Of a stretch of 64,000 nucleotides of DNA, positions 7,651-59,860 are shown in pieces. Position 1 is the first letter of the stretch. The number at the start of each line of letters is the position of its first letter. The stretch is from Selaginella moellendorffii (Eukaryota; Plantae; Lycopodiophyta): the NCBI RefSeq assembly GCF_000143415.4, contig NW_003314278.1, positions 1,324,673 to 1,388,672 on the forward strand, in the 5' to 3' direction. The position numbers and the translations under genes were made by a program. The notes under the pieces were generated by a model. It was not told the origin of the DNA. It did no database searches and saw only the letters and a list, made by a program, of their open reading frames with translations.

Positions 7651-8128
7651 TGTGAGACACAAAATCCCTAGGCCCCAAAGTGGAGCCGGAAGGGCGCCAC
7701 ATGGTAGTGGCCGAAGCGAAAGCCAAACGAGCGTAACACGTTTGGACCAAAAGCTCCGACTTGAAAAGTCAAGAGCGGGAGTGGAACTCCCAACGAAGTG
7801 CTTGAGGAACGAGCACGAAGCGAGCAAAAGGCGAGGCTCCAAAAAGGGACCCAAAAAAGGGCCAACACATGACACATGGGAGTGTCCGAGATGGACTCGA
7901 GTTGGAGTCCGAAGTGGAGTCCGAGATGGACCCGAGTTGGAGTCCGAAGTGGAGTCCGAGATGGAGTCCGAGATGGACCCGAGATGGAGTCCGAGATGGA
8001 GTCCGAGGTGGACCCGAGATGGACCCGAAATGGAGTCCGAGATGGAGTCCGAGATGGACCCGAGATGGACCCGAGATGGAGTCCGAGATGGAGTCCGAGA
8101 TGGAGTCCGAAGTCAAGACCGAGACCGG

Positions 8129-50900: not shown

Positions 50901-52029
50901 ATAGTGATGCAACATAGGTGAAATACTTTTATTAAGCTACTCTATTGCTTAAGGAGTGCATGTTGACTTGTCAAAGTATGTTATGCAGAGGCATCCTATC
51001 AAACAAACTCTTGGCTTGAATCAAATCCCCACCCAAACTAGTGTATTGCAAAGCATTCTCCCAGTTGAGCCTTAGGATCCAGTTTAGTGTATTTCCCTCT
51101 CTGATGTATTGTCCTGATCCTTTTACCGAAGGCCATCCTGGGAACTGGGACCTCCTTGGGAACTATACATGGAAACAGTGCACCACTGTTATGGGGATAA
51201 AAAACAATACCTTGAGGTGATGGGGTTGCTTCCATAACAAAGATGATTTGAGTCTCAGCACCATCAAGCATTATCCAATCACAAACCTCGATAACTTCAG
51301 TTTGTAAAGCAAGATGAAGGCGATCACAAGCGATGCTGCCTTAAGCTTTGATGTGGACTTTTCATCCTGGGTTGTAATGGGTTGTCATGAGGCCATGTTT
51401 GCTCCAAGCTGACATTAAACAAATACCTGACTTTACCTTTTTCATTGTATCATACCTTGTCCACTGCTGAGGAAGAAAAACAAGATCCCAACAAGAACTT
51501 TGCTGTAAGTGATGGCTTGCTAGCTCTTTGTAGATCCAATAAGTTTTTGATCGAAGCTCCCACATTTCTATGCCACCTAGGCCAAAAACCTCTACCCAAG
51601 CCTGGAGCTGAACAGTCACCTATATACTGTTGATTACTGTTCTTATGCACTACGTTGAAGAACAAGCAATCAGCTAATGCCTCTGTCAGATGGTCTGGTT
51701 CTTTCTGACTTAACCTGGGTAGGAGTGTGACTTCCATATCTTCAACATCTCTTTTGCTATTCCATCCTGGACTTTCTTTGTGTTGAGAGGAGCAATGCCA
51801 ATCGATTCCTTGTTTCTAGTTACCACTCTGTTTAGGCAAGATCTTCTGCAGCTAAGCTCTGAAGAGGAGGTGCCAGCTCTGGTTTCGTGGATATAAACCT
51901 GACACAAGCACTTTGAAGAGAAGAGCTTTGGATTGAATTCCTGGGTGTGGCACATTCTGAATAACTGAATTCCACTCTACTTTTGCCCAGACTTTGCACC
52001 TGCTGGAGTTTCTAAAGTTTCTACATATG

Positions 52030-52260
52030 TTGTTGGTGATCAAGTGTTGGTGAGTTATCGGGTGTTGCGGATCCAAGGTTTTTGCTGCGTAGGTCCTTAT
52101 CACATCGTCCAACAAGTTGGTCCACAAATCTATGTGGTGACACTCAATGCACAACGTCAAGAGAAGATCCATGTGAAGCGGTTAGCTCGATATTGTGTGT
52201 GAACGGATTGATGTAAGGATTCTACCATATATTCTATGATAGATATAGATAAACTCAACA
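52030..52260 (+). pseudogene. Gypsy integrase C-terminal GPY/F fragment, followed by a possible LTR start (TGTAAGG, ~52212)
   Basis: GDQVLV..VGPYHIVQQVGPQIYVV..IHVKRLARY. Confidence 0.55.
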
Positions 52261-53406
52261 AGATTGGAATACACTAACTTTTTAATAATAATAAATAAAA
52301 ATTTTTTAATGTGTATTTATGGAGCCCACAAGAGTAGGAGTGAGGTGTTATTAAATTATGAATCCCACATTATTTATATGCTCATATGATCCTGAGGTTT
52401 AGGGATATGAGGGAGTAAGTTTTATGTAGAGGGAGGAAAAATAAGAATTAATTAGAGTGAAAATACGAGTTATTGTGAAATTAGAGTATAATGTGAGTTA
52501 AGAGTTAACACGAGCTAAGAGTAAAAACGTGATGTAGCAGCTTAAAAGAGGGAAGTAGGAATGCTCAGATGGAGTTCCACCAGGTAGAAAAGACAAGTCA
52601 TACCTCAAGCCTCGGATTGCTCTCACCCGGTTGCCTACTTTAACCAAGCCCCGAACCACCCAGCAGTCTTGGCGCACAAGGATGACATCAGCCCTAACCT
52701 CTTGCTCCACTGCTCCTACTTCTGAGCTGCTAGCAGCTTCTCCCCTCCTTAAAAAAAAAGGTCTGTTGTTCTCTTGGAGTTCAAGAGGCATCCTCTTCAC
52801 CGTCTCCTCTGTTTTTGCTAGCTAGTTAGCTCTTACAAGAAGGAGCACAAGCCAAGTTCAGCTCCATGCTCAGCTCTATCATCTCCTCTTTAAGACACCT
52901 CACCTCTTTGAAGCCATTCAGGAGAGCTAGCACGCTTCACGTCTAGACGTCCCCCCCTTTTTTCCTTTTTGCGATTGTCTCTTCAAACTCATCATACTTA
53001 TTTAACTCACCAAACCTTACCAAGCCGAGTGCAGGTTTTGAAACCCCATGAGTCACCTTGGCCTTTTTCCATCTTCCAGTTGAGCTCTCCAACAATCTTG
53101 ACATGCGGATACGTGCAAACTGCTCCTTGAGCCAGGACCATTTCTCCCGGAGACAACTTATGCTACAACACTCTCTGCTCAACGATCTCAATGTGGAAAG
53201 ATCCACAAAGCTGTCCCACTCATCATAGTTGTAGAAGAAATCATCCTCATACTGCATCTGCAACCTTGCTCGAGCCCGAGCCTCCGCCATCGCAAGCTTC
53301 TCCCTCATCTTGATCAGCTCACACGAGGCGGCAAAACAAGTCCAGGTCCTGAGGAACAACAATGGAATACACCTTTCCCAGGTACCTGTCTCGAAACCTG
53401 TGAAAG

Positions 53407-53733
53407 NNNNNNNNNNNNNNNNNNNNNNNNNNNNNNNNNNNNNNNNNNNNNNNNNNNNNNNNNNNNNNNNNNNNNNNNNNNNNNNNNNNNNNNNNNNNNN
53501 NNNNNNNNNNNNNNNNNNNNNNNNNNNNNNNNNNNNNNNNNNNNNNNNNNNNNNNNNNNNNNNNNNNNNNNNNNNNNNNNNNNNNNNNNNNNNNNNNNNN
53601 NNNNNNNNNNNNNNNNNNNNNNNNNNNNNNNNNNNNNNNNNNNNNNNNNNNNNNNNNNNNNNNNNNNNNNNNNNNNNNNNNNNNNNNNNNNNNNNNNNNN
53701 NNNNNNNNNNNNNNNNNNNNNNNNNNNNNNNNN
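53407..53733. other. Assembly gap (N run)
   Basis: Run of N. Confidence 1.
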
Positions 53734-54415
53734 AGTATGCCACAATCGTTCGCTTGAAAATCTGAAGATGTCAATCGAAGCATGCAAGCAAAAACATGAA
53801 GTAAAGAAGTGCAGGTGGACAACAAAGGAGATGAACTGAGCGAGGCCAAGAACACATATAAGGACTGAATGTAAGCACGTGAGGCCACGTGTGGTTTTTT
53901 CCTCCGTGCGTGGCTTCATGTGCGAAGAGTTTGGTGTGGTAAGGTATGTTGCAGAGCAGCCAGAAGCCCTGGGTGAATATAAGTACGTGAGGCCTTGTGA
54001 GGTTTTACCACCGCCCGAGGACTCCTGTGCATGGGCCCCGGGCGAGAGTCATTTGTGAAAGTGTTCTGCATGAAACTGGTGCCCTGAGGCTTCTGGCCAC
54101 GTGGCCCCATGATTAATTTGTGTAGAGTGTGGTTTATTTTTGCATATTGAGTGTATCGATATCTTTTAGTTAGCAGATTATATTGAAGAACTGAAGACGA
54201 TATTGAACTGAAGATTCTTCAGCTCTTGAGCAACTGATTGCTGCTGGCTCACTTTCTATATATATCAAAGAGATTTTTTTTTAACAATAAACATCTAAGC
54301 TGCTGCAGTTAAGCTGTGACATTGTAAAGTTTAAAAAGGAAAAGAATTAGAAAAAGAAAAAAACAGAAATCACGAGCATTTTACTACTGCAATAACAAAT
54401 CGGGATTTCTAGGGT

Positions 54416-57157
54416 ATGTGTGCGGCGCTAGGGTTTGTGTGGTGTGTGTCATTTCTCAACAATCTCATGGAGTGGAAAACGTTTTTCAGGGATCCCACTT
54501 TCTGGTGGGACAACAGGTTCAAGAAGAAAAACAAGTTCTTCTCAGAGTCCTACCCGGATTTCAAACATGTTTCTACCGGAGAGAGCCTCTGGATCGCCAA
54601 CAGGAAAACACCGACCTGGGTCTCTGCAAAACTCGAGGCGCTCGCTGACCCAGCTGTAGGTAAGGCCACCACGGCCCGCTACAAATCTCCACATACCCCA
54701 CCTGTAGCTGGTGATGAACCGGTGAGTTTAGGGAGGCTGATACACCGCGTGAGAGACTCAGCTGAGAGCAGATCCCTTTCTTTGGGAAAACAAGCCCATG
54801 AAGCTGTGCTCAAGAGTGATGAGCACAAAAGCAACATCTACTTGTTGACGGGATTGATCGATATGTACTGCAAGTGTGGCGAGCTTAAGGAGGCTCGCAA
54901 GATTTTCGACTCCATGGGAACCCGGAGTGTTGCGTCCTACAACGCGATCATCCAGGGCTGCGGCTCGAACGGGCAAGCTGAACTTGCTCTGGAGTACTAC
55001 TCTGCCCTGAGAGCTTGTACCACCATTCAACCCAACGATCGGACACATGTCGCGGTGATCAGCGCCTGCTCCAGACTTGCTACCGAATCCAGCGAGAAGA
55101 GGGAGAGGGCTCTACGCATTGGGATGGAGATCCATTCAATGCTGAGCAAGGAGAAGAAACAGCTAGATCTGTTCGTGGCGACTTGCCTGGTAGACATGTA
55201 CTCCAAGTGTGGCGAGCTTGAGGAGGCTCGCAAGATTTTCCACTCCATGGGAACTCGGAGTGTTGTGTCCTACACCGCGATCATCCAGGGGTGCAACACG
55301 AACGGGCGAGCTGAACTTGCTCTGGAGTACTACTCTGCCCTGAGAGCTTGTACCACCATTCAACCCAACGATCGGACTCATGTCGCGGTGATCAGCGCCT
55401 GCTCCACACTTGCTACCGAATCCAGCGAGAAGAGGGAGAGAGCTCTACGCATCGGGATGGAGATCCATTCAATGCTGAGCAAGGAGAAGAAACAGCTAGA
55501 TCTGTTCGTGGCGAATTGCCTGGTAGACATGTACTGCAAGTGTGGTGAGCTTGAGGAGGCTCGCAAGATTTTCCACTCCATGGGAACTCAGAGTGTTGTG
55601 TCCTACAACGCGATCATCCAGGGCTGCGGCTCGAACGGGCAAGCTGAAGTTGCTCTGGAGTACTACTTTGCCCTGAGAGCTGATAACACCATTCAACCCG
55701 ACGATCGGACACATGTCGCGGTGATCAGCGCCTGCTCCACACTTGCTACCGAATCCAGCGAGAAGAGGGAGAGAGCTCTATGCATCGGGATGGAGATCCA
55801 TTCAATGCTGAGCAAGAAGAAACAGGTAGATCTGTTCGTGGCGAATTGCCTGGTAGACATGTACTGCAAGTGTGGCGAGCTTGAGGAGGCTCGCAAGATT
55901 TTCGACTCCATGGGAACCCGGAGTGTTGTGTCCTACAACGCGATCATCCAGGGCTGCGGCTCGAACGGGCAAGCTGAAGTTGCTCTGGAGTACTACTCTG
56001 CCCTGAGAGCTTGTACCACCATTCAACCTAACGATCGGACCCATGTCGCGGTGATCAGCGCCTGCTCCACACTTGCTACCGAATCCAGTGAGAAGAGGGA
56101 GAGAGCTCTACGCTTCGGGATGGAGATCCATTCAATGCTGAGCAAGGAGAAGAAACAGCTAGATCTGTTCGTGGCGAATTGCCTGGTAGACATGTACTGC
56201 AAGTGTGGCGAGCTTGAGGAGGCTCGCAAGATTTTCGACTCCATGAGAACCCGGAGTGTTGTGTCCTACAACGTGATCATCCAGGGCTGCGGCTCGAACG
56301 GGCAAGCTGAACTTGCTCTGGAGTACTACTCTGCCCTGAGAGCTTGTACCACCATTCAAGCTAATGCTTGCACCTACACCTGCGTCCTTGTTGCTTGCGG
56401 GAGTGTGATGGCGATCAAGCTCGGGAGGGAGATTCACCAGCTGGCGAAGCATGAAGGGCTGCTGAAAAACAATCCAGTTCTGGGCTCCAGCCTGGTGAGC
56501 TTCTACGGCAAATGCGGCGATGTTGATTCTGCTCAGGAAGCGTTTGACGAGTGCCGAGCTCGGGACGACACGGGTCTCTGGAACTCTCTCATACAGGCTT
56601 ACACTCTCCAGGGCCGATCGATCGAGGCCTTGGAGCGTTTCTATTCCATGACTCAGGAGGAGGGCTGTAAAGCTGACGATGTGAGTTTTGTCTCGGTGTT
56701 GAACGCTTGCAGCCATGGTGGTCTGGTCGGGAAAGGAAGGCAGCTTCTGGATGAAATGCCCAAGCAGTATGGAGTCAAGCCACGTCTGGAGCATTATGTG
56801 TGCCTGATCGATATGCTCGGGCGAGCTAACCTCCTCGACGAAGCTGTGAGAGTTCTCAGAACCATGCCTTTTGAACCGGATGCAGTGGTTTGGACGTCCC
56901 TGCTCGGAGCCTGCCGGAAGTGGAAGAATTACACGATCGGCAAACTTGCATTTGAGCGTCTTGTGGAGATGGATCCCAAGAGCGGCACGCCCTACGCATT
57001 GATGGCCAATATATTTGGAAACCTGGGGATGCTCAGTGAAAGGGCCGCTGTTGTGGAGAGAATGAGAGGTGAAGGCAGCTTCAGGGAGCCCGGGAGAAGC
57101 TGGTGGACGGATGTTAGCTCTCTTTCTCTTCCTCGGGTATGTCTTTTAGAACGTTGA
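54416..57157 (+). CDS. PLS-class PPR RNA-editing-factor-like protein with an N-terminal OSB-type PDF motif. ORF stops shortly after the PG box because of an internal inversion; alternative start at 54467
   Basis: 913-aa intronless ORF. WKTFFRDPTFWWDNR..K..YPDFKHVSTGESLW..TPTWV at the N-terminus; S-P-L triplets; P2-L2-S2 (SVLNACSHGGLV, EHYVCLIDMLGRANLLDEA); E1/E2 (VVWTSLLGAC, PYALMANIF); PGRSWW. Confidence 0.92.
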   Translation: MCAALGFVWCVSFLNNLMEWKTFFRDPTFWWDNRFKKKNKFFSESYPDFKHVSTGESLWIANRKTPTWVSAKLEALADPAVGKATTARYKSPHTPPVAGDEPVSLGRLIHRVRDSAESRSLSLGKQAHEAVLKSDEHKSNIYLLTGLIDMYCKCGELKEARKIFDSMGTRSVASYNAIIQGCGSNGQAELALEYYSALRACTTIQPNDRTHVAVISACSRLATESSEKRERALRIGMEIHSMLSKEKKQLDLFVATCLVDMYSKCGELEEARKIFHSMGTRSVVSYTAIIQGCNTNGRAELALEYYSALRACTTIQPNDRTHVAVISACSTLATESSEKRERALRIGMEIHSMLSKEKKQLDLFVANCLVDMYCKCGELEEARKIFHSMGTQSVVSYNAIIQGCGSNGQAEVALEYYFALRADNTIQPDDRTHVAVISACSTLATESSEKRERALCIGMEIHSMLSKKKQVDLFVANCLVDMYCKCGELEEARKIFDSMGTRSVVSYNAIIQGCGSNGQAEVALEYYSALRACTTIQPNDRTHVAVISACSTLATESSEKRERALRFGMEIHSMLSKEKKQLDLFVANCLVDMYCKCGELEEARKIFDSMRTRSVVSYNVIIQGCGSNGQAELALEYYSALRACTTIQANACTYTCVLVACGSVMAIKLGREIHQLAKHEGLLKNNPVLGSSLVSFYGKCGDVDSAQEAFDECRARDDTGLWNSLIQAYTLQGRSIEALERFYSMTQEEGCKADDVSFVSVLNACSHGGLVGKGRQLLDEMPKQYGVKPRLEHYVCLIDMLGRANLLDEAVRVLRTMPFEPDAVVWTSLLGACRKWKNYTIGKLAFERLVEMDPKSGTPYALMANIFGNLGMLSERAAVVERMRGEGSFREPGRSWWTDVSSLSLPRVCLLER
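54835..56360 (+). repeat. Tandem array of ~4.6 near-identical units (333, 333, 330, 333 bp), each one S-P-L PPR triplet of 111 aa
   Basis: Periodicity is visible in the DNA and in the antisense ORF starts 55248, 55581, 55911, 56244. Confidence 0.95.
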
Positions 57158-57277
57158 TCACATCACTCACGTACCCCTCCTCTTTCATTCTCAGCAACAA
57201 TTGCTTGAGCTTGGCCGTAATCTCGTCGCTCTGTGAGTGACTCCTATCCCTGACAGAAAAAGAATGCACTTTTCCTG
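57118..57277 (-). other. Inverted segment encoding the E+/gating part of the DYW domain
   Basis: Minus strand reads GKVHSFSVRDRSHSQSDEITAKLKQLLLRMKEEGYVSDVINVLKDIPEEEKE, exactly the segment expected between SWWTD and xxLCGHSEK. Confidence 0.92.
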
Positions 57278-57502
57278 GATCACCTGTGCGGCCACAGTGA
57301 GAAGCTTGCGCTGGGGTGTGCTCTGGTGAACTCGCAGCAGAAGGAGACCATCAGAATTGTGAAAAATCTCCGAGTTTGTGACGATTGCCATGCGGCCACT
57401 GCTCTCATCTCTAAGCTGGAAAAAAGGCTAATCATCTGCAAAGATGCCAGTCGGGTTCATGTGTTCCATGATGGCAGATGTTCCTGTGACAACTACTTTT
57501 GA
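57278..57502 (+). CDS. Catalytic C-terminal half of the DYW cytidine deaminase domain, in frame with the upstream ORF
   Basis: DHLCGHSEKLALGCALVNSQQKETIRIVKNLRVCDDCHAATALISKLEKRLIICKDASRVHVFHDGRCSCDNYF*. HxE, CxxCH, HxF and CSC are intact; ends NYF. Confidence 0.9.
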   Translation, partial: DHLCGHSEKLALGCALVNSQQKETIRIVKNLRVCDDCHAATALISKLEKRLIICKDASRVHVFHDGRCSCDNYF

Positions 57503-58869
57503 AAACATGTCAGTGCTCTTTCTTGCAGTTATCCCTGGTTTTAAACCCTCCGTGAGTCAAGCAGAAACATGGGCCGCTGAGTGAGCATGCCTCGTCAAAG
57601 TACCGCCGCCAACCTGAACTTCACGGAGAAAAAATTAACATTTAAAAGTTAAAACTATGCAAAAGGAGGATGACACGTTGTCTTAAATTTAAATTTCTTT
57701 TTGGTAGCAGAATTGGGGAATGCTGACTAAACCTGCCCACAGGTGCCCTGAAACAGAGCGCCCAGATTCAGATAATAAGCCTTAGTATGAAGACTTGCCG
57801 GTACCCAAACTCTTTGCTGATAGCAAGTACCGACTCATGTTCCGGGAGGAAGGTGATGGCGGCTTGCAGCATGACCAACTTTGGGTTTGTGCTTCTAGAG
57901 CACGTTGAAAACATGTCGAAGCTGGTGACGATGGCATTTGTTTCTTGCAATGTACTCACCAGTTCTTCGGCAACGTCTTCCTTCCAGATTTTTTGAGCTT
58001 GTCGTGAGTGGTGACTTGCTTGCTCTCTCCTGTGACAACTTCTTCCAGCCTCTGGTGCCCAACCTCAAGACTCTCTTGTGGATGGAGCTAGCCCTACACA
58101 GTGTGTGTGTGTATCAACCAGCAGATGCACAAATCGTTGAGAATTAATTAGCAACAAGTGTGTATCATAGGCTTAGTACGTAGTGTACTAGTGTACATGT
58201 ACATGTGTTTCAGCTAAATATAATGGGCCAAATACACCGAAGAAGTGTGTATAAGAATAGTAGAAACAAATTAAAAAATGTAAATTAAAAAGTGCAAAAG
58301 AAATGAAAATAAAAATTGTCCATCCTCATCAGTTTGCTGAAATTAAGTTGGATTCAATTCTTCCAGCTCCAAATATTGTGTGATTGAGTTGTAAGTTAAT
58401 TAATAGTAGAAAATAAGAAAAAAACAAACATTGAAGAAATAGTGTTTGATAATATCGTCTTTGCTTTTAGTTTTTTATTTTCGAAAGAAAATTAGTGGGG
58501 GAGTGCTGGTAAAGATATCTTGGCTGTTCATTGGTTAATTAAATGAGCATGTTTAGAGATGTTTATAAAAGTTTAGCTCTGGACCAAGAGTTACCCGAAA
58601 ATTAAAGTTCAAAATTTACGTTTTCCCTATTTGCACAATAACTTAAGCTAAAGTAATGTACTTACCCGTATTTTTTATGGGAAAATTATTATTCGCACGA
58701 AAAAAAAAGGTGAATTTAGAGGATTCTTAAGTAATTTTCAAAAACCCCGACCAAATCTAAAGTGTTGGGGTCATTTTAAAATTTATTCCGGAAATATTCG
58801 AGAAGATTCTTAGGTAAGGCTTTGGCGTGCCTGCGAAGAAGATCTGATCTCGCGGCACGGCCCGAGAAT

Positions 58870-59860
58870 TAATGGCAGCAGCCGCGGAGATTTATGAGGA
58901 GAGGCCTGAGGAGGTGGAGGAAGCAGGAAATCCGATTTTAGGGTTGGAAGAGGAAACAGGGAAATGGGGCTGATCGAGCTGGATCTGGGCCTGCTCGTGC
59001 TCTATCTTCACCAACAGGAGGAGGAAGAGGTGCCCATGGAGGGAGAGGTGGCCATGGAGTGGGAGGAGAGCGCGGGGTGGCCGGGGTTGGCCGCGGATCT
59101 CTGAATCTGGCCCCGGGAGGATTGGGCCATGGTTCTCAGGCGGCTCGAGGAGGGGGTGCCCCGGGAGGAGGAGGCCATGGTTCTACTCTAGGAGGAGGAC
59201 GCCGCGGTTCTTCTCCGGGAGGAGGAGGCCATGGATCATCGCCAGGAGGAGGCCAAGCCTCGGTGGGAGGAGCCGAAGCCACAGCGGGAGGAGTCCAAGC
59301 CGCGCCCGGAGGAGCCCAAGCCACGTCTGGAGGAGTTCCCCTGGAGCACAGCGTGCCGGGAGCTCCAACTACTTTGAGAACCATGGCGGTGAGTTTACAT
59401 TTCTTAGGTTGCATGCATGCATGAGTGATTGAGAGCTCCCGGCCGGGTCATGAAGAAGAGGGAGATGACAGCGTCCCCGATCTGGAACAAGACCCGGATG
59501 CTCACATGGAGGAGCTCCACCACGAGGCTGTCCAGTTTGTGGATACCTCGGGTTTTGCTGCACCTGCTGCTGCGAAGAGAACCCGGGGAAAGAACTGGAA
59601 CCATGCTGAGACCATGGTCCTGATTGATCTCGTTCGGGAAAAACATCTCGCGAAGATTGCGGGGGAGGGAGGAGCAGCCAGCATGTTCTCATGACGAAGA
59701 CACAGCGCTGGAATCTCATCTTTCACCCTTTTGCTTTAGGGTTTAACTCTTTTCTTCAATTAGGTTTTGTTGCTTGCTGTGCAAGCTATTGCGGATGACA
59801 AGAGCCCCGGTCTCCAAGTGCTGCCTGAGGAAGAAGACTGAACTTGAGGTTCGTCGGGCT
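58870..59860 (+). pseudogene. Harbinger ORF1-like gene: Gly-rich repeats and a truncated Myb/SANT motif
   Basis: 27-bp repeats encoding GGGGHGSSP at 59160-59250; KRTRGKNWNHAETMVLIDLVREKH at ~59575-59645; directly upstream of a transposase. Confidence 0.6.

What the first reader, a model, noticed from the sequence alone, without database searches (positions are those of the whole stretch)
54416..57502. PPR-DYW deaminase gene fused to an OSB-type PDF single-stranded-DNA-binding motif
Seen: residues 20-73 (54473-54634), WKTFFRDPTFWWDNRFKKKNKFFSESYPDFKHVSTGESLWIANRKTPTWVSAKL, precede a PLS-PPR array, E1/E2 and a PGRSWW-type DYW domain. Established: W..FF..P..WWDNR..K....PDFKH..TGE.LW....P.WV is the PDF motif of plant organellar ssDNA-binding (OSB) proteins, where it binds ssDNA. 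PLS-DYW proteins are C-to-U RNA editors and normally have only a transit peptide before the PPRs. Inference: this architecture could tether an editing factor to ssDNA, R-loops or nucleoids (co-transcriptional editing), or direct a programmable cytidine deaminase to DNA. There is at most a 17-aa leader, and it contains a TAGGGTTT telo-box typical of 5' UTRs. The protein may therefore start at M18 with no transit peptide, and its compartment is open. I do not know of a characterised PDF-PPR-DYW protein, but cannot exclude that the fusion has been noted.
Basis: partly seen in the sequence, partly recalled or inferred. Interest (0 to 1): 0.9.

Follow-up and report, generated by a model that had tools for sequence, protein, structure and literature searches.

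The report
PDF motif fused to PPR-DYW editor
A Selaginella RNA-editing gene (a PPR-DYW cytidine deaminase) begins with the small DNA-binding "PDF" domain otherwise known only from plant organelle DNA-binding (OSB) proteins; this copy is broken, but intact expressed copies exist and the same apparently undescribed architecture occurs in liverworts, mosses, lycophytes and ferns.

Summary
Observation confirmed. Residues 20-76 of the ORF at 54416 are a full-length OSB-type PDF motif. A profile built only from OB-fold OSB proteins scores it 61 bits (E 6.5e-12 for 1.8 billion proteins). Its AlphaFold model matches only the PDF regions of Arabidopsis OSB1-4. It is in frame with a PLS-PPR array, an E motif and a DYW deaminase.

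This copy is a pseudogene: a clean 158-bp inversion (57120-57277) splits the DYW domain. A collinear paralogue in Selaginella moellendorffii (L001) has an intact 1234-aa single-exon ORF. RNA-library contigs carry the un-inverted form, start about 25-70 nt before M18 and run unspliced through the motif.

The fusion is not a one-off. PDF+PPR proteins, several with complete DYW domains, occur in Calypogeia, Sphagnum, Diphasiastrum, Selaginella and ferns. 54 of the 118 closest homologues of one Diphasiastrum member carry the motif. No seed-plant PPR hit did.

Pfam has no PDF model, and no searchable paper links PDF with PPR.

What the motif does is inferred: most likely an auxiliary single-strand nucleic-acid clamp on a flexible linker. 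ssDNA tethering is a rival; DNA editing is unlikely.

The scan's first readers flagged the same fusion at eight other places in this genome.

The parts
54429..54436 (+). TAGGGTTT (telo-box-like octamer) in the short leader
   Evidence: Read directly from the sequence. Conserved in paralogue L001 and partly deleted in L002. Not statistically meaningful alone.
54396..54466 (+). Probable 5' UTR: contigs from RNA libraries begin at 54396 (X1) or 54442 (X2, X8, X14); zero depth at 53750-54277
   Evidence: read laying. The contigs come from a near-identical paralogue (fixed differences at 54589, 54613, 54638), not from this exact locus.
54467..54469 (+). Likely start codon (M18 of the long ORF)
   Evidence: The ATG at 54416 is out of frame in the intact paralogue L001. 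ATG 54467 is conserved in all three copies. NCBI model P0001 starts at the equivalent Met.
54473..54643 (+). OSB-type PDF motif (ORF residues 20-76)
   Evidence: phmmer. OSB-only profile: 61.1 bits, full length. AF2 plus Foldseek match to AtOSB1-4 PDF regions. The nearly invariant residues W3 P10 W13 D15 R17 K20 P30 D31 F32 L41 W42 P49 W51 are all present.
54656..54697 (+). Low-confidence (probably flexible) linker between the PDF domain and the PPR solenoid
   Evidence: In the AF2 model of the first 330 residues, model residues 64-77 have pLDDT below 50, between confident PDF and PPR parts.
54728..56926 (+). PLS-class PPR array
   Evidence: Pfam PPR_2 1.7e-76, PPR 1.8e-73, PPR_1 1.2e-49. Helical repeats in the AF2 model.
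54863..56359 (+). 333-bp tandem repeat, 4.5 copies, 95% matches (a 111-aa repeat unit, about three PPR motifs) inside the array
   Evidence: Tandem Repeats Finder. L001 and L002 hold more copies of the unit than the window (ORF translations; repeat-register matches).
56927..57103 (+). E motif (E1/E2)
   Evidence: Pfam PF20431, 2.1e-09, residues 838-896.
57089..57106 (+). PG box (PGRSWW), start of the DYW domain
   Evidence: Sequence.
57120..57277 (-). 158-bp inverted segment encoding the E+/N-terminal part of the DYW domain; this break makes the copy a pseudogene
   Evidence: Minus-strand ORF matches Pfam Eplus_motif at 3e-07. Flipping restores 255/260 identity to L001. Contigs of all four RNA-library runs carry this segment in the opposite orientation. 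The same inversion is in the L002 copy.
57278..57502 (+). C-terminal part of the DYW deaminase (HSE...CxDCH zinc site, terminal DNYF) plus the stop codon
   Evidence: Pfam PF14432, 1.4e-26, profile positions 21-92 of 93.

Best explanation
The locus is an inactivated member of a young, segmentally duplicated family in Selaginella moellendorffii or a very close relative. The family encodes PLS-class PPR-E-DYW C-to-U RNA-editing factors whose mature N-terminus is a bona fide OSB-type PDF domain.

Shown:
- The PDF motif is homologous to that of OSB proteins in sequence and in predicted fold.
- It is in frame and unspliced with the PPR-DYW body.
- An intact 1234-aa paralogue exists.
- RNA-library contigs of the un-inverted form include the motif.
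- PDF+PLS-PPR, with or without DYW, is an old and common architecture of liverworts, mosses, lycophytes and ferns. It was not seen in any seed-plant PPR sampled.
- The same core residues are conserved in the OSB and PPR contexts.

Inferred mechanism:
- The PPR array reads the RNA upstream of the target cytidine, and the C-terminal DYW domain deaminates it, as in characterised PLS-DYW factors.
- The PDF domain sits on a flexible linker (lowest-confidence stretch about 14 residues) at the end of the array that faces the 5' side of the bound RNA.
- It acts there as a sequence-independent single-stranded nucleic-acid clamp. It would raise affinity or dwell time on the transcript, or hold the factor on single-stranded organellar nucleic acid near its target.
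- It may be a built-in accessory module in plants that lack MORF helper proteins.

The window copy itself is non-functional as a deaminase because of the 158-bp inversion.
For: Homology of the motif.

Architecture and breakage.

Intact paralogue: L001 4001-7705 is one 1234-aa ORF, with Pfam DYW positions 1-92 of 93.

Expression: contigs run unspliced from 54396/54442 to 54892. There is zero depth upstream. The 3' contigs carry the un-inverted DYW in 4 of 4 runs.

Spread:
- Selaginella P0104/P0154, Diphasiastrum P0150 cluster, Adiantum P0100, transcript-derived P0027.
- Transcript-derived P0190, Adiantum, Ceratopteris, Sphagnum.
- 54 of 118 closest PLS-PPR homologues of Diphasiastrum P0159 carry the motif.
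- Complete DYW plus PDF in Diphasiastrum P0216, P0258, P0278, Sphagnum P0223, Calypogeia P0232, P0233.
- Sphagnum P0201 is a single intronless ORF: presequence, PDF, PPR.

Conservation: 10 of the 19 invariant columns of a 330-residue alignment of 44 PDF-PPR proteins lie in the 60-residue PDF part.

Modularity: confident PDF and PPR parts are joined by a linker with pLDDT below 50.

Literature:
- The PDF motif is sufficient for ssDNA binding by AtOSB1 (PMC6963530).
- OSB1/2 prefer ssDNA over dsDNA or RNA (PMC4166229).
- MORF genes occur only in seed plants (PMC13386178).
Against: - No binding, localisation or editing data exist for any PDF-PPR protein.
- Recombinant OSB1/2 prefer ssDNA to RNA. 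That fits an ssDNA tether at least as well as an RNA clamp.
- The window family, Selaginella P0104 and Adiantum P0100 have almost nothing before the motif (2-8 residues). Most Sphagnum, Diphasiastrum and Calypogeia members have 20-110 presequence-like residues. Organellar targeting of the Selaginella family is therefore unproven.
- The runs are only guessed to be RNA and are assembler contigs, from a paralogue rather than this locus.
- The complementary distribution with MORF rests on limited seed-plant sampling.
- I could not read Zaegel et al. 2006 or non-open PPR surveys, so prior mention of the fusion cannot be excluded.
Confidence: 0.6

Rival explanations
1. ssDNA or nucleoid tether. The PDF domain binds single-stranded organellar DNA, such as the non-template strand of transcription bubbles, R-loops or replication and recombination intermediates. 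This concentrates the editing factor at nucleoids, so that editing is co-transcriptional.
For: The PDF motif is the ssDNA-binding element of OSB1, and OSB1/2 prefer ssDNA over RNA. The PDF core residues are unchanged in the PPR context. The flexible linker would allow simultaneous contact with RNA and DNA.
Against: There is no direct evidence. The Selaginella family lacks an obvious presequence. Binding preference was measured for whole OSB proteins or OSB1 fragments, not for PPR-linked motifs.
Confidence: 0.22
2. The PDF module redirects the DYW deaminase to DNA, giving programmable C-to-U changes in organellar ssDNA.
For: Only the co-occurrence of an ssDNA-binding motif and a cytidine deaminase in one polypeptide.
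Against: The PPR-E-DYW body is a standard RNA-editing architecture with the PG box and the HSE/CxDCH site. Many PDF-PPR proteins have no DYW domain at all, so the motif's role does not depend on a deaminase.
Confidence: 0.03
3. The PDF module is not a nucleic-acid binder in this context. It would instead mediate protein-protein contacts (oligomerisation, or docking to OSB, Whirly or other nucleoid proteins) or contribute to import.
For: AtOSB2 is a tetramer (PMC6963530). In three lineages the motif lies at the extreme N-terminus, where targeting information usually sits.
Against: The conserved positions are aromatic and basic residues typical of single-strand binding, and they are identical to those of OSB motifs. 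In most taxa a separate presequence-like segment precedes the motif.
Confidence: 0.1
4. Artefact or relic: a chance resemblance, a gene-model merger, or a captured OSB exon fragment carried along in a repeat family without function.
For: This copy and L002 are pseudogenes. The family lies in duplicated blocks. NCBI models of the family are visibly wrong in the repeat region.
Against: The match has E 6.5e-12 at database scale over the full motif. There are uninterrupted ORFs in genomic DNA of Selaginella and Sphagnum and transcript-derived ORFs. Invariant PDF residues are conserved across four plant divisions.
Confidence: 0.02

Closest known systems
OSB proteins (Arabidopsis OSB1-4; organellar ssDNA-binding proteins, Zaegel et al. 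2006)
   Same: The roughly 50-residue PDF motif is shared, with the same conserved W/P/WWD.R/K/PDF/LW/P.W core. The predicted fold is the same (TM 0.67-0.73 to the AtOSB1-4 PDF regions).
   Different: No SSB-like OB fold is present. The motif is single and N-terminal rather than one to several copies at the C-terminus. It is followed by a PPR-E-DYW body. The loop after WWDNR..K is 4 residues longer. A 2026 OSB survey describes insertions longer than 2 residues in this region for seed-plant Group III OSBs (PMC13393729).
PLS-class PPR-DYW C-to-U RNA editing factors (for example Physcomitrium PPR56/PPR65 and Arabidopsis DYW-type factors)
   Same: PLS repeats, an E motif, the PG box, and a DYW deaminase with HSE and CxDCH.
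   Different: An extra folded nucleic-acid-binding domain precedes the PPR array. The extra PPR domains listed for Physcomitrium are RRM, LAGLIDADG, SMR, NYN, CBS and SAP, not PDF (PMC9459714). This copy has an inverted DYW segment. The protein ends in DNYF rather than DYW.
PPR proteins with an added N-terminal RNA-binding domain (RRM-PPR: AtPPR4 / PpPPR_3)
   Same: A general single-strand nucleic-acid-binding module sits N-terminal to a sequence-specific PPR tract (table in PMC9459714).
   Different: That module is an RRM on a P-class splicing factor, not a PDF on a PLS-class editing factor.
MORF/RIP accessory editing proteins of seed plants
   Same: Possibly an analogous role: a helper that improves PLS-PPR function. 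The taxonomic distribution is complementary. MORF occurs only in seed plants (PMC13386178), and PDF-PPR was found here only in non-seed plants.
   Different: MORFs are unrelated in sequence and fold, act in trans, and bind the PPR protein rather than nucleic acid. The analogy is an inference only.

Membership tests
PDF motif (OSB-type ssDNA-binding motif) | About 50 residues with the conserved Pro-Asp-Phe signature and flanking W..FF..P..WWD.R..K / LW..P.WV residues | tested here: met
   Full-length match (model 1-52) to a profile of 204 motifs from OB-fold OSB proteins: 61.1 bits, E 6.5e-12 at Z=1.8e9. All 13 nearly invariant positions are present.
PDF motif (OSB-type ssDNA-binding motif) | Same fold as the PDF regions of characterised OSB proteins | tested here: met
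   AF2 pLDDT 89.8. Foldseek against Swiss-Prot AFDB returns only AtOSB1-4 PDF regions, TM 0.67-0.73, rmsd 1.2-1.5 A. Both sides are predictions. There is no solved structure.
PDF motif (OSB-type ssDNA-binding motif) | Binds single-stranded DNA | not testable with these tools
   Known for AtOSB1 only from the literature (PMC6963530). Needs EMSA of residues 18-80.
OSB protein family | Central SSB-like OB-fold domain preceding the PDF motif(s) | tested here: not met
   No PF00436 hit in the window protein. The motif is N-terminal and followed by PPRs. The protein shares a domain with OSBs but is not an OSB.
PLS-class PPR-DYW RNA editing factor | Tandem PLS-type PPR motifs followed by an E1/E2 motif | tested here: met
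   Pfam PPR_2 1.7e-76, PPR 1.8e-73, E_motif 2.1e-09.
PLS-class PPR-DYW RNA editing factor | Contiguous DYW deaminase domain with PG box, HxE and CxxCH zinc site | tested here: not met
   In this copy, 57120-57277 is inverted and the ORF stops at 57157. The feature is met in paralogue L001, with PF14432 positions 1-92 of 93.
PLS-class PPR-DYW RNA editing factor | N-terminal organelle transit peptide | tested here: inconclusive
   Only 2 residues precede the motif from M18. No upstream coding exon appears in the RNA contigs. Homologues in Sphagnum, Diphasiastrum and Calypogeia have 20-110 presequence-like residues. No targeting predictor was available.
PLS-class PPR-DYW RNA editing factor | Site-specific C-to-U editing of an organellar transcript | not testable with these tools
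   Needs a knockout or a heterologous editing assay of an intact paralogue.

The most novel reading that the evidence does not exclude
The PDF domain is an ancestral, built-in single-strand nucleic-acid-binding accessory of PLS-class editing factors in land plants that lack MORF proteins. It either clamps the factor to RNA 5' of its PPR footprint or couples editing to single-stranded organellar DNA at sites of transcription. It was lost from PPR proteins in the seed-plant lineage, where trans-acting MORF helpers appeared. That would define a previously unrecognised class of editing factor, PDF-PPR(-E/-DYW), comprising dozens of genes per genome in liverworts, mosses, lycophytes and ferns.
Probability: 0.3. 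Interest if true: 0.8.

Novelty: new variant of a known kind. Interest (0 to 1): 0.68.

Why it matters
PLS-DYW proteins are the specificity and catalytic factors of plant organellar C-to-U RNA editing, and they are being developed as programmable editors.

An additional, independently folded nucleic-acid-binding domain sits on many of them in four non-seed plant divisions. It appears to have escaped description for two reasons. Pfam has no PDF model, and OSB surveys require an OB fold.

If the domain contributes to substrate capture, three things would follow:
- It would help explain how editing works without MORF proteins in early-diverging land plants.
- It would offer a small (about 55-residue) portable module for improving designer PPR editors.
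- It would link RNA editing physically to organellar DNA or nucleoids if its ssDNA preference is retained.

It also widens the known range of the PDF domain beyond OSB proteins.

Tried and rejected
- ESM Atlas feature search of the motif returned only low-scoring phage clusters and was uninformative.
- Pfam and NCBIfam gave no family for the motif, even on true OSB PDF regions. These libraries cannot detect it.
- Foldseek against the PDB found no solved structure with this fold.
- I tested for a shared intron position as evidence of exon shuffling, and the result was negative. Selaginella P0104 has a 67-nt intron inside the motif. Populus OSB1 has both motifs in one exon, and Sphagnum P0201 is intronless.
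- The motif tree has too few columns (53) to decide between one and several fusion events. Only the pairing of the window motif with Selaginella P0104 is well supported, at 100/91.
- High identity (about 55%) between Diphasiastrum and Sphagnum PDF-PPRs first looked like orthology. It is shared by dozens of consensus-like PLS proteins, so I did not use it.
- The 32-nt unmatched 5' end of three RNA contigs was not found in the window, L001 or L002. There is no AG acceptor at 54440-54441. I therefore read it as another paralogue's upstream sequence, not a spliced exon.
- Zaegel et al. 2006 (PMC1785405) is not held, and P0216 has no contig on record.
- Eight literature searches and reading of the returned papers (for example) found no link between PDF and PPR.
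- Plant genomes are not in the DNA collections, so copy number in this genome could not be counted directly.
Full report
**What is at the locus**

The window holds a 913-aa ORF at 54416-57157 (+). Pfam finds a long PPR array and an E motif at residues 838-896. Out of frame at 57275-57499 it finds the C-terminal two thirds of a DYW deaminase, E 1.4e-26.

The missing E+/N-terminal DYW part is encoded on the minus strand at 57114-57269. Flipping 57120-57277 (158 bp) raises identity to an intact paralogue from 139/260 to 255/260. The break is therefore a clean in-place inversion, and this copy is a pseudogene.

A 333-bp unit of 111 aa, about three PPR motifs, is repeated 4.5 times at 54863-56359.

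**Is the N-terminal segment a PDF motif?**

Yes.
- phmmer of residues 18-85 against 1.84 billion representative proteins gave 485 hits at E<=1e-3 and 123 at E<=1e-10. Most hits are 200-500 aa with 2-13 repeated matches.
- Named members are OSB3 (Amborella, Canna), OSB2-like (Asparagus) and OSB1 (Populus).
- 90 of the collected proteins combine the motif with an SSB-like OB fold. A profile built only from their 204 motifs matches window residues 20-76 end to end, at 61.1 bits and E 6.5e-12 for a 1.8-billion-sequence search space. It hits nothing else in the window.
- All 13 nearly invariant positions of a 103-motif alignment are present.
- AlphaFold2 folds the motif confidently: pLDDT 89.8, pTM 0.75, a small alpha/beta unit.
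- In Swiss-Prot AFDB the only matches are the PDF regions of Arabidopsis OSB1-4, with TM 0.67-0.73 and rmsd 1.2-1.5 A.
- AFDB clusters return OSB-like proteins. The PDB has no such fold.
- Pfam and NCBIfam have no model for the motif, even on genuine OSB sequences.

**Organism, paralogues and expression**

Proteins 97-99% identical over the motif belong to Selaginella moellendorffii.

Scaffold GL377582.1 (L001) is collinear with the window over about 8 kb including the flanks, at 89-97% identity. It carries one uninterrupted 1234-aa ORF: Met, PDF, about seven of the 111-aa repeat units, E motif and a complete DYW (Pfam positions 1-92 of 93). The NCBI model P0001 (566 aa) removes the repeats as a spurious intron.

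GL377592.1 (L002) holds two head-to-head copies. One has a 2-bp deletion in the motif and the same inversion as the window. The inverted pseudogene has therefore itself been duplicated.

About 200 bp upstream of the start is conserved among the three copies. The ATG at 54416 is out of frame in L001, which leaves M18 (54467) as the conserved start.

Contigs from four runs filed as RNA show the following:
- Depth is zero over 53750-54277.
- They begin at 54396 or 54442.
- They run unspliced through the motif into the first PPRs, to 54892.
- In all four runs they carry 57120-57277 in the opposite orientation to the window.
- Three fixed differences show that they derive from a paralogue.

The intact form is therefore expressed with its PDF motif, and the window copy is not detected. 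Two caveats apply: the library type is guessed, and contigs show presence, not absence.

**Is the fusion a one-off?**

No.
- Other PDF+PPR proteins were found in a second Selaginella gene (P0104/P0154, no DYW), Diphasiastrum complanatum, Adiantum and a transcript-derived 1371-aa protein with a presequence and three motifs.
- A second search added a transcriptome ORF, two more Adiantum proteins, Ceratopteris and Sphagnum.
- Among the 118 best PLS-PPR homologues of the Diphasiastrum protein, 54 carry one to three N-terminal PDF motifs. They come from Diphasiastrum, several Sphagnum species, the liverwort Calypogeia fissa and unnamed environmental assemblies. None of the Cryptomeria, Ginkgo or Typha hits has the motif.
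- Complete DYW domains (1-93 of 93) together with the motif were confirmed in three Diphasiastrum, one Sphagnum and two Calypogeia proteins.
- Sphagnum fallax P0201 is a single intronless genomic ORF: a 43-residue presequence, then PDF, then PPR.
- In a 330-residue alignment of 44 such proteins, 10 of the 19 invariant columns fall in the 60-residue PDF part. This argues for purifying selection on the same residues as in OSBs.
- The window motif is sister to that of Selaginella P0104 (100/91). Otherwise the 53-column tree cannot tell one fusion from several.

**Anatomy and likely mechanism**

The AF2 model of the first 330 residues (pLDDT 89.1) shows a confident PDF unit, a linker with pLDDT below 50 (model residues 64-77) and a confident PPR solenoid. 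The motif is thus an independent module on a flexible tether, at the N-terminal end of the array.

In PPR-RNA complexes, by established knowledge, that end faces the 5' side of the bound RNA.

The literature states two things about the motif. It is sufficient for ssDNA binding in AtOSB1 (PMC6963530). OSB1/2 prefer ssDNA to dsDNA or RNA (PMC4166229).

I therefore infer a sequence-independent single-strand clamp that aids substrate capture. Redirection of the deaminase to DNA is unlikely, since many PDF-PPR proteins have no DYW.

MORF genes are confined to seed plants (PMC13386178), and PDF-PPR was found here only outside seed plants. This is a suggestive but thinly sampled complementarity.

**Open points**

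The Selaginella family, P0104 and Adiantum P0100 have only 2-8 residues before the motif. Most homologues elsewhere have 20-110 presequence-like residues. The compartment of the Selaginella proteins is therefore unresolved.

Three RNA contigs carry 32 unmatched nucleotides before 54442. There is no AG acceptor there, and the sequence is absent from the window, L001 and L002. I read this as another paralogue's upstream sequence.

**Novelty**

No paper in the searchable library connects the PDF motif with PPR proteins (searches).
- A 2026 OSB family survey required OB fold plus PDF and does not mention PPR (PMC13393729).
- A 2026 kingdom-wide survey of editing-factor domain fusions does not list it (PMC13386178).
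- The Physcomitrium PPR catalogue lists RRM, LAGLIDADG, SMR, NYN, CBS and SAP only (PMC9459714).
- OSB screens based on the SSB Pfam domain would miss it (PMC6902596).

I could not read Zaegel et al. 2006 or closed-access PPR surveys, so earlier mention cannot be excluded.

The scan's first readers flagged the same fusion at eight other places of this genome. Those notes are unchecked, and I count them only as consistent with a multi-copy family.

**Verdict**

This is a new variant of a known kind, a PLS-PPR(-DYW) editing factor with an OSB-type PDF domain. It is old and widespread in non-seed land plants. This particular copy is dead.

Noticed in passing
window 57120-57277; L002 about 7770-7930: The clean 158-bp inversion inside the DYW domain is shared by the window copy and one copy on scaffold GL377592.1. 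The inverted pseudogene has therefore itself been duplicated, or the two are divergent haplotypes. NCBI model P0002 reads across the junction in another frame.
   Followed up: partly
window 54863-56359; L001 4394-6562; L002 5173-7008: The 333-bp (111-aa) tandem repeat unit differs in copy number among paralogues: 4.5 in the window and more in L001 and L002. NCBI gene models (P0001, P0002, P0010) excise the repeats as a false intron, which yields 497-566-aa proteins from ORFs of roughly 1000-1234 aa.
   Followed up: partly
window 51032-59276 versus L001 499-10195: The window and scaffold GL377582.1 are collinear over about 8 kb including both flanks, at 89-97% identity. The family spreads by segmental DNA duplication with its promoter, not by retroposition.
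   Followed up: partly
L002 686-2791 (-) and 4627-8323 (+): Two PDF-PPR copies lie head to head on GL377592.1. The spacer between them matches window 52486-54169 in reverse orientation.
   Followed up: no
L004 2579-2645: The second Selaginella PDF-PPR gene (P0104, no DYW) has a 67-nt GT-AG intron inside the PDF motif, right after WWDNRRNK. The intronless window family has a 4-residue longer loop at that point.
   Followed up: partly
proteins P0150 and P0155-P0164 (Diphasiastrum complanatum O6H91_01G119900 / 12G041000): Annotated isoforms of one Diphasiastrum gene differ in whether they keep two, one or no PDF motifs. This suggests alternative splicing or alternative starts that include or drop the module.
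   Followed up: no
protein P0004 (Kingdonia uniflora, 1160 aa): This OSB-like protein has 13 tandem PDF motifs, far more than the one to five reported for OSBs.
   Followed up: no
window 53407-53733: A 327-base assembly gap (run of N) lies about 700 bp upstream of the gene. ORFs listed across it are meaningless.
   Followed up: no
literature: PMC4166229 versus PMC13393729: A 2014 review lists OSB as not detected in Selaginella moellendorffii. A 2026 survey reports one or two OSB copies in its single, unnamed-here lycophyte. Whether Selaginella keeps a canonical OB-fold OSB alongside its PDF-PPR genes was not resolved here.
   Followed up: no
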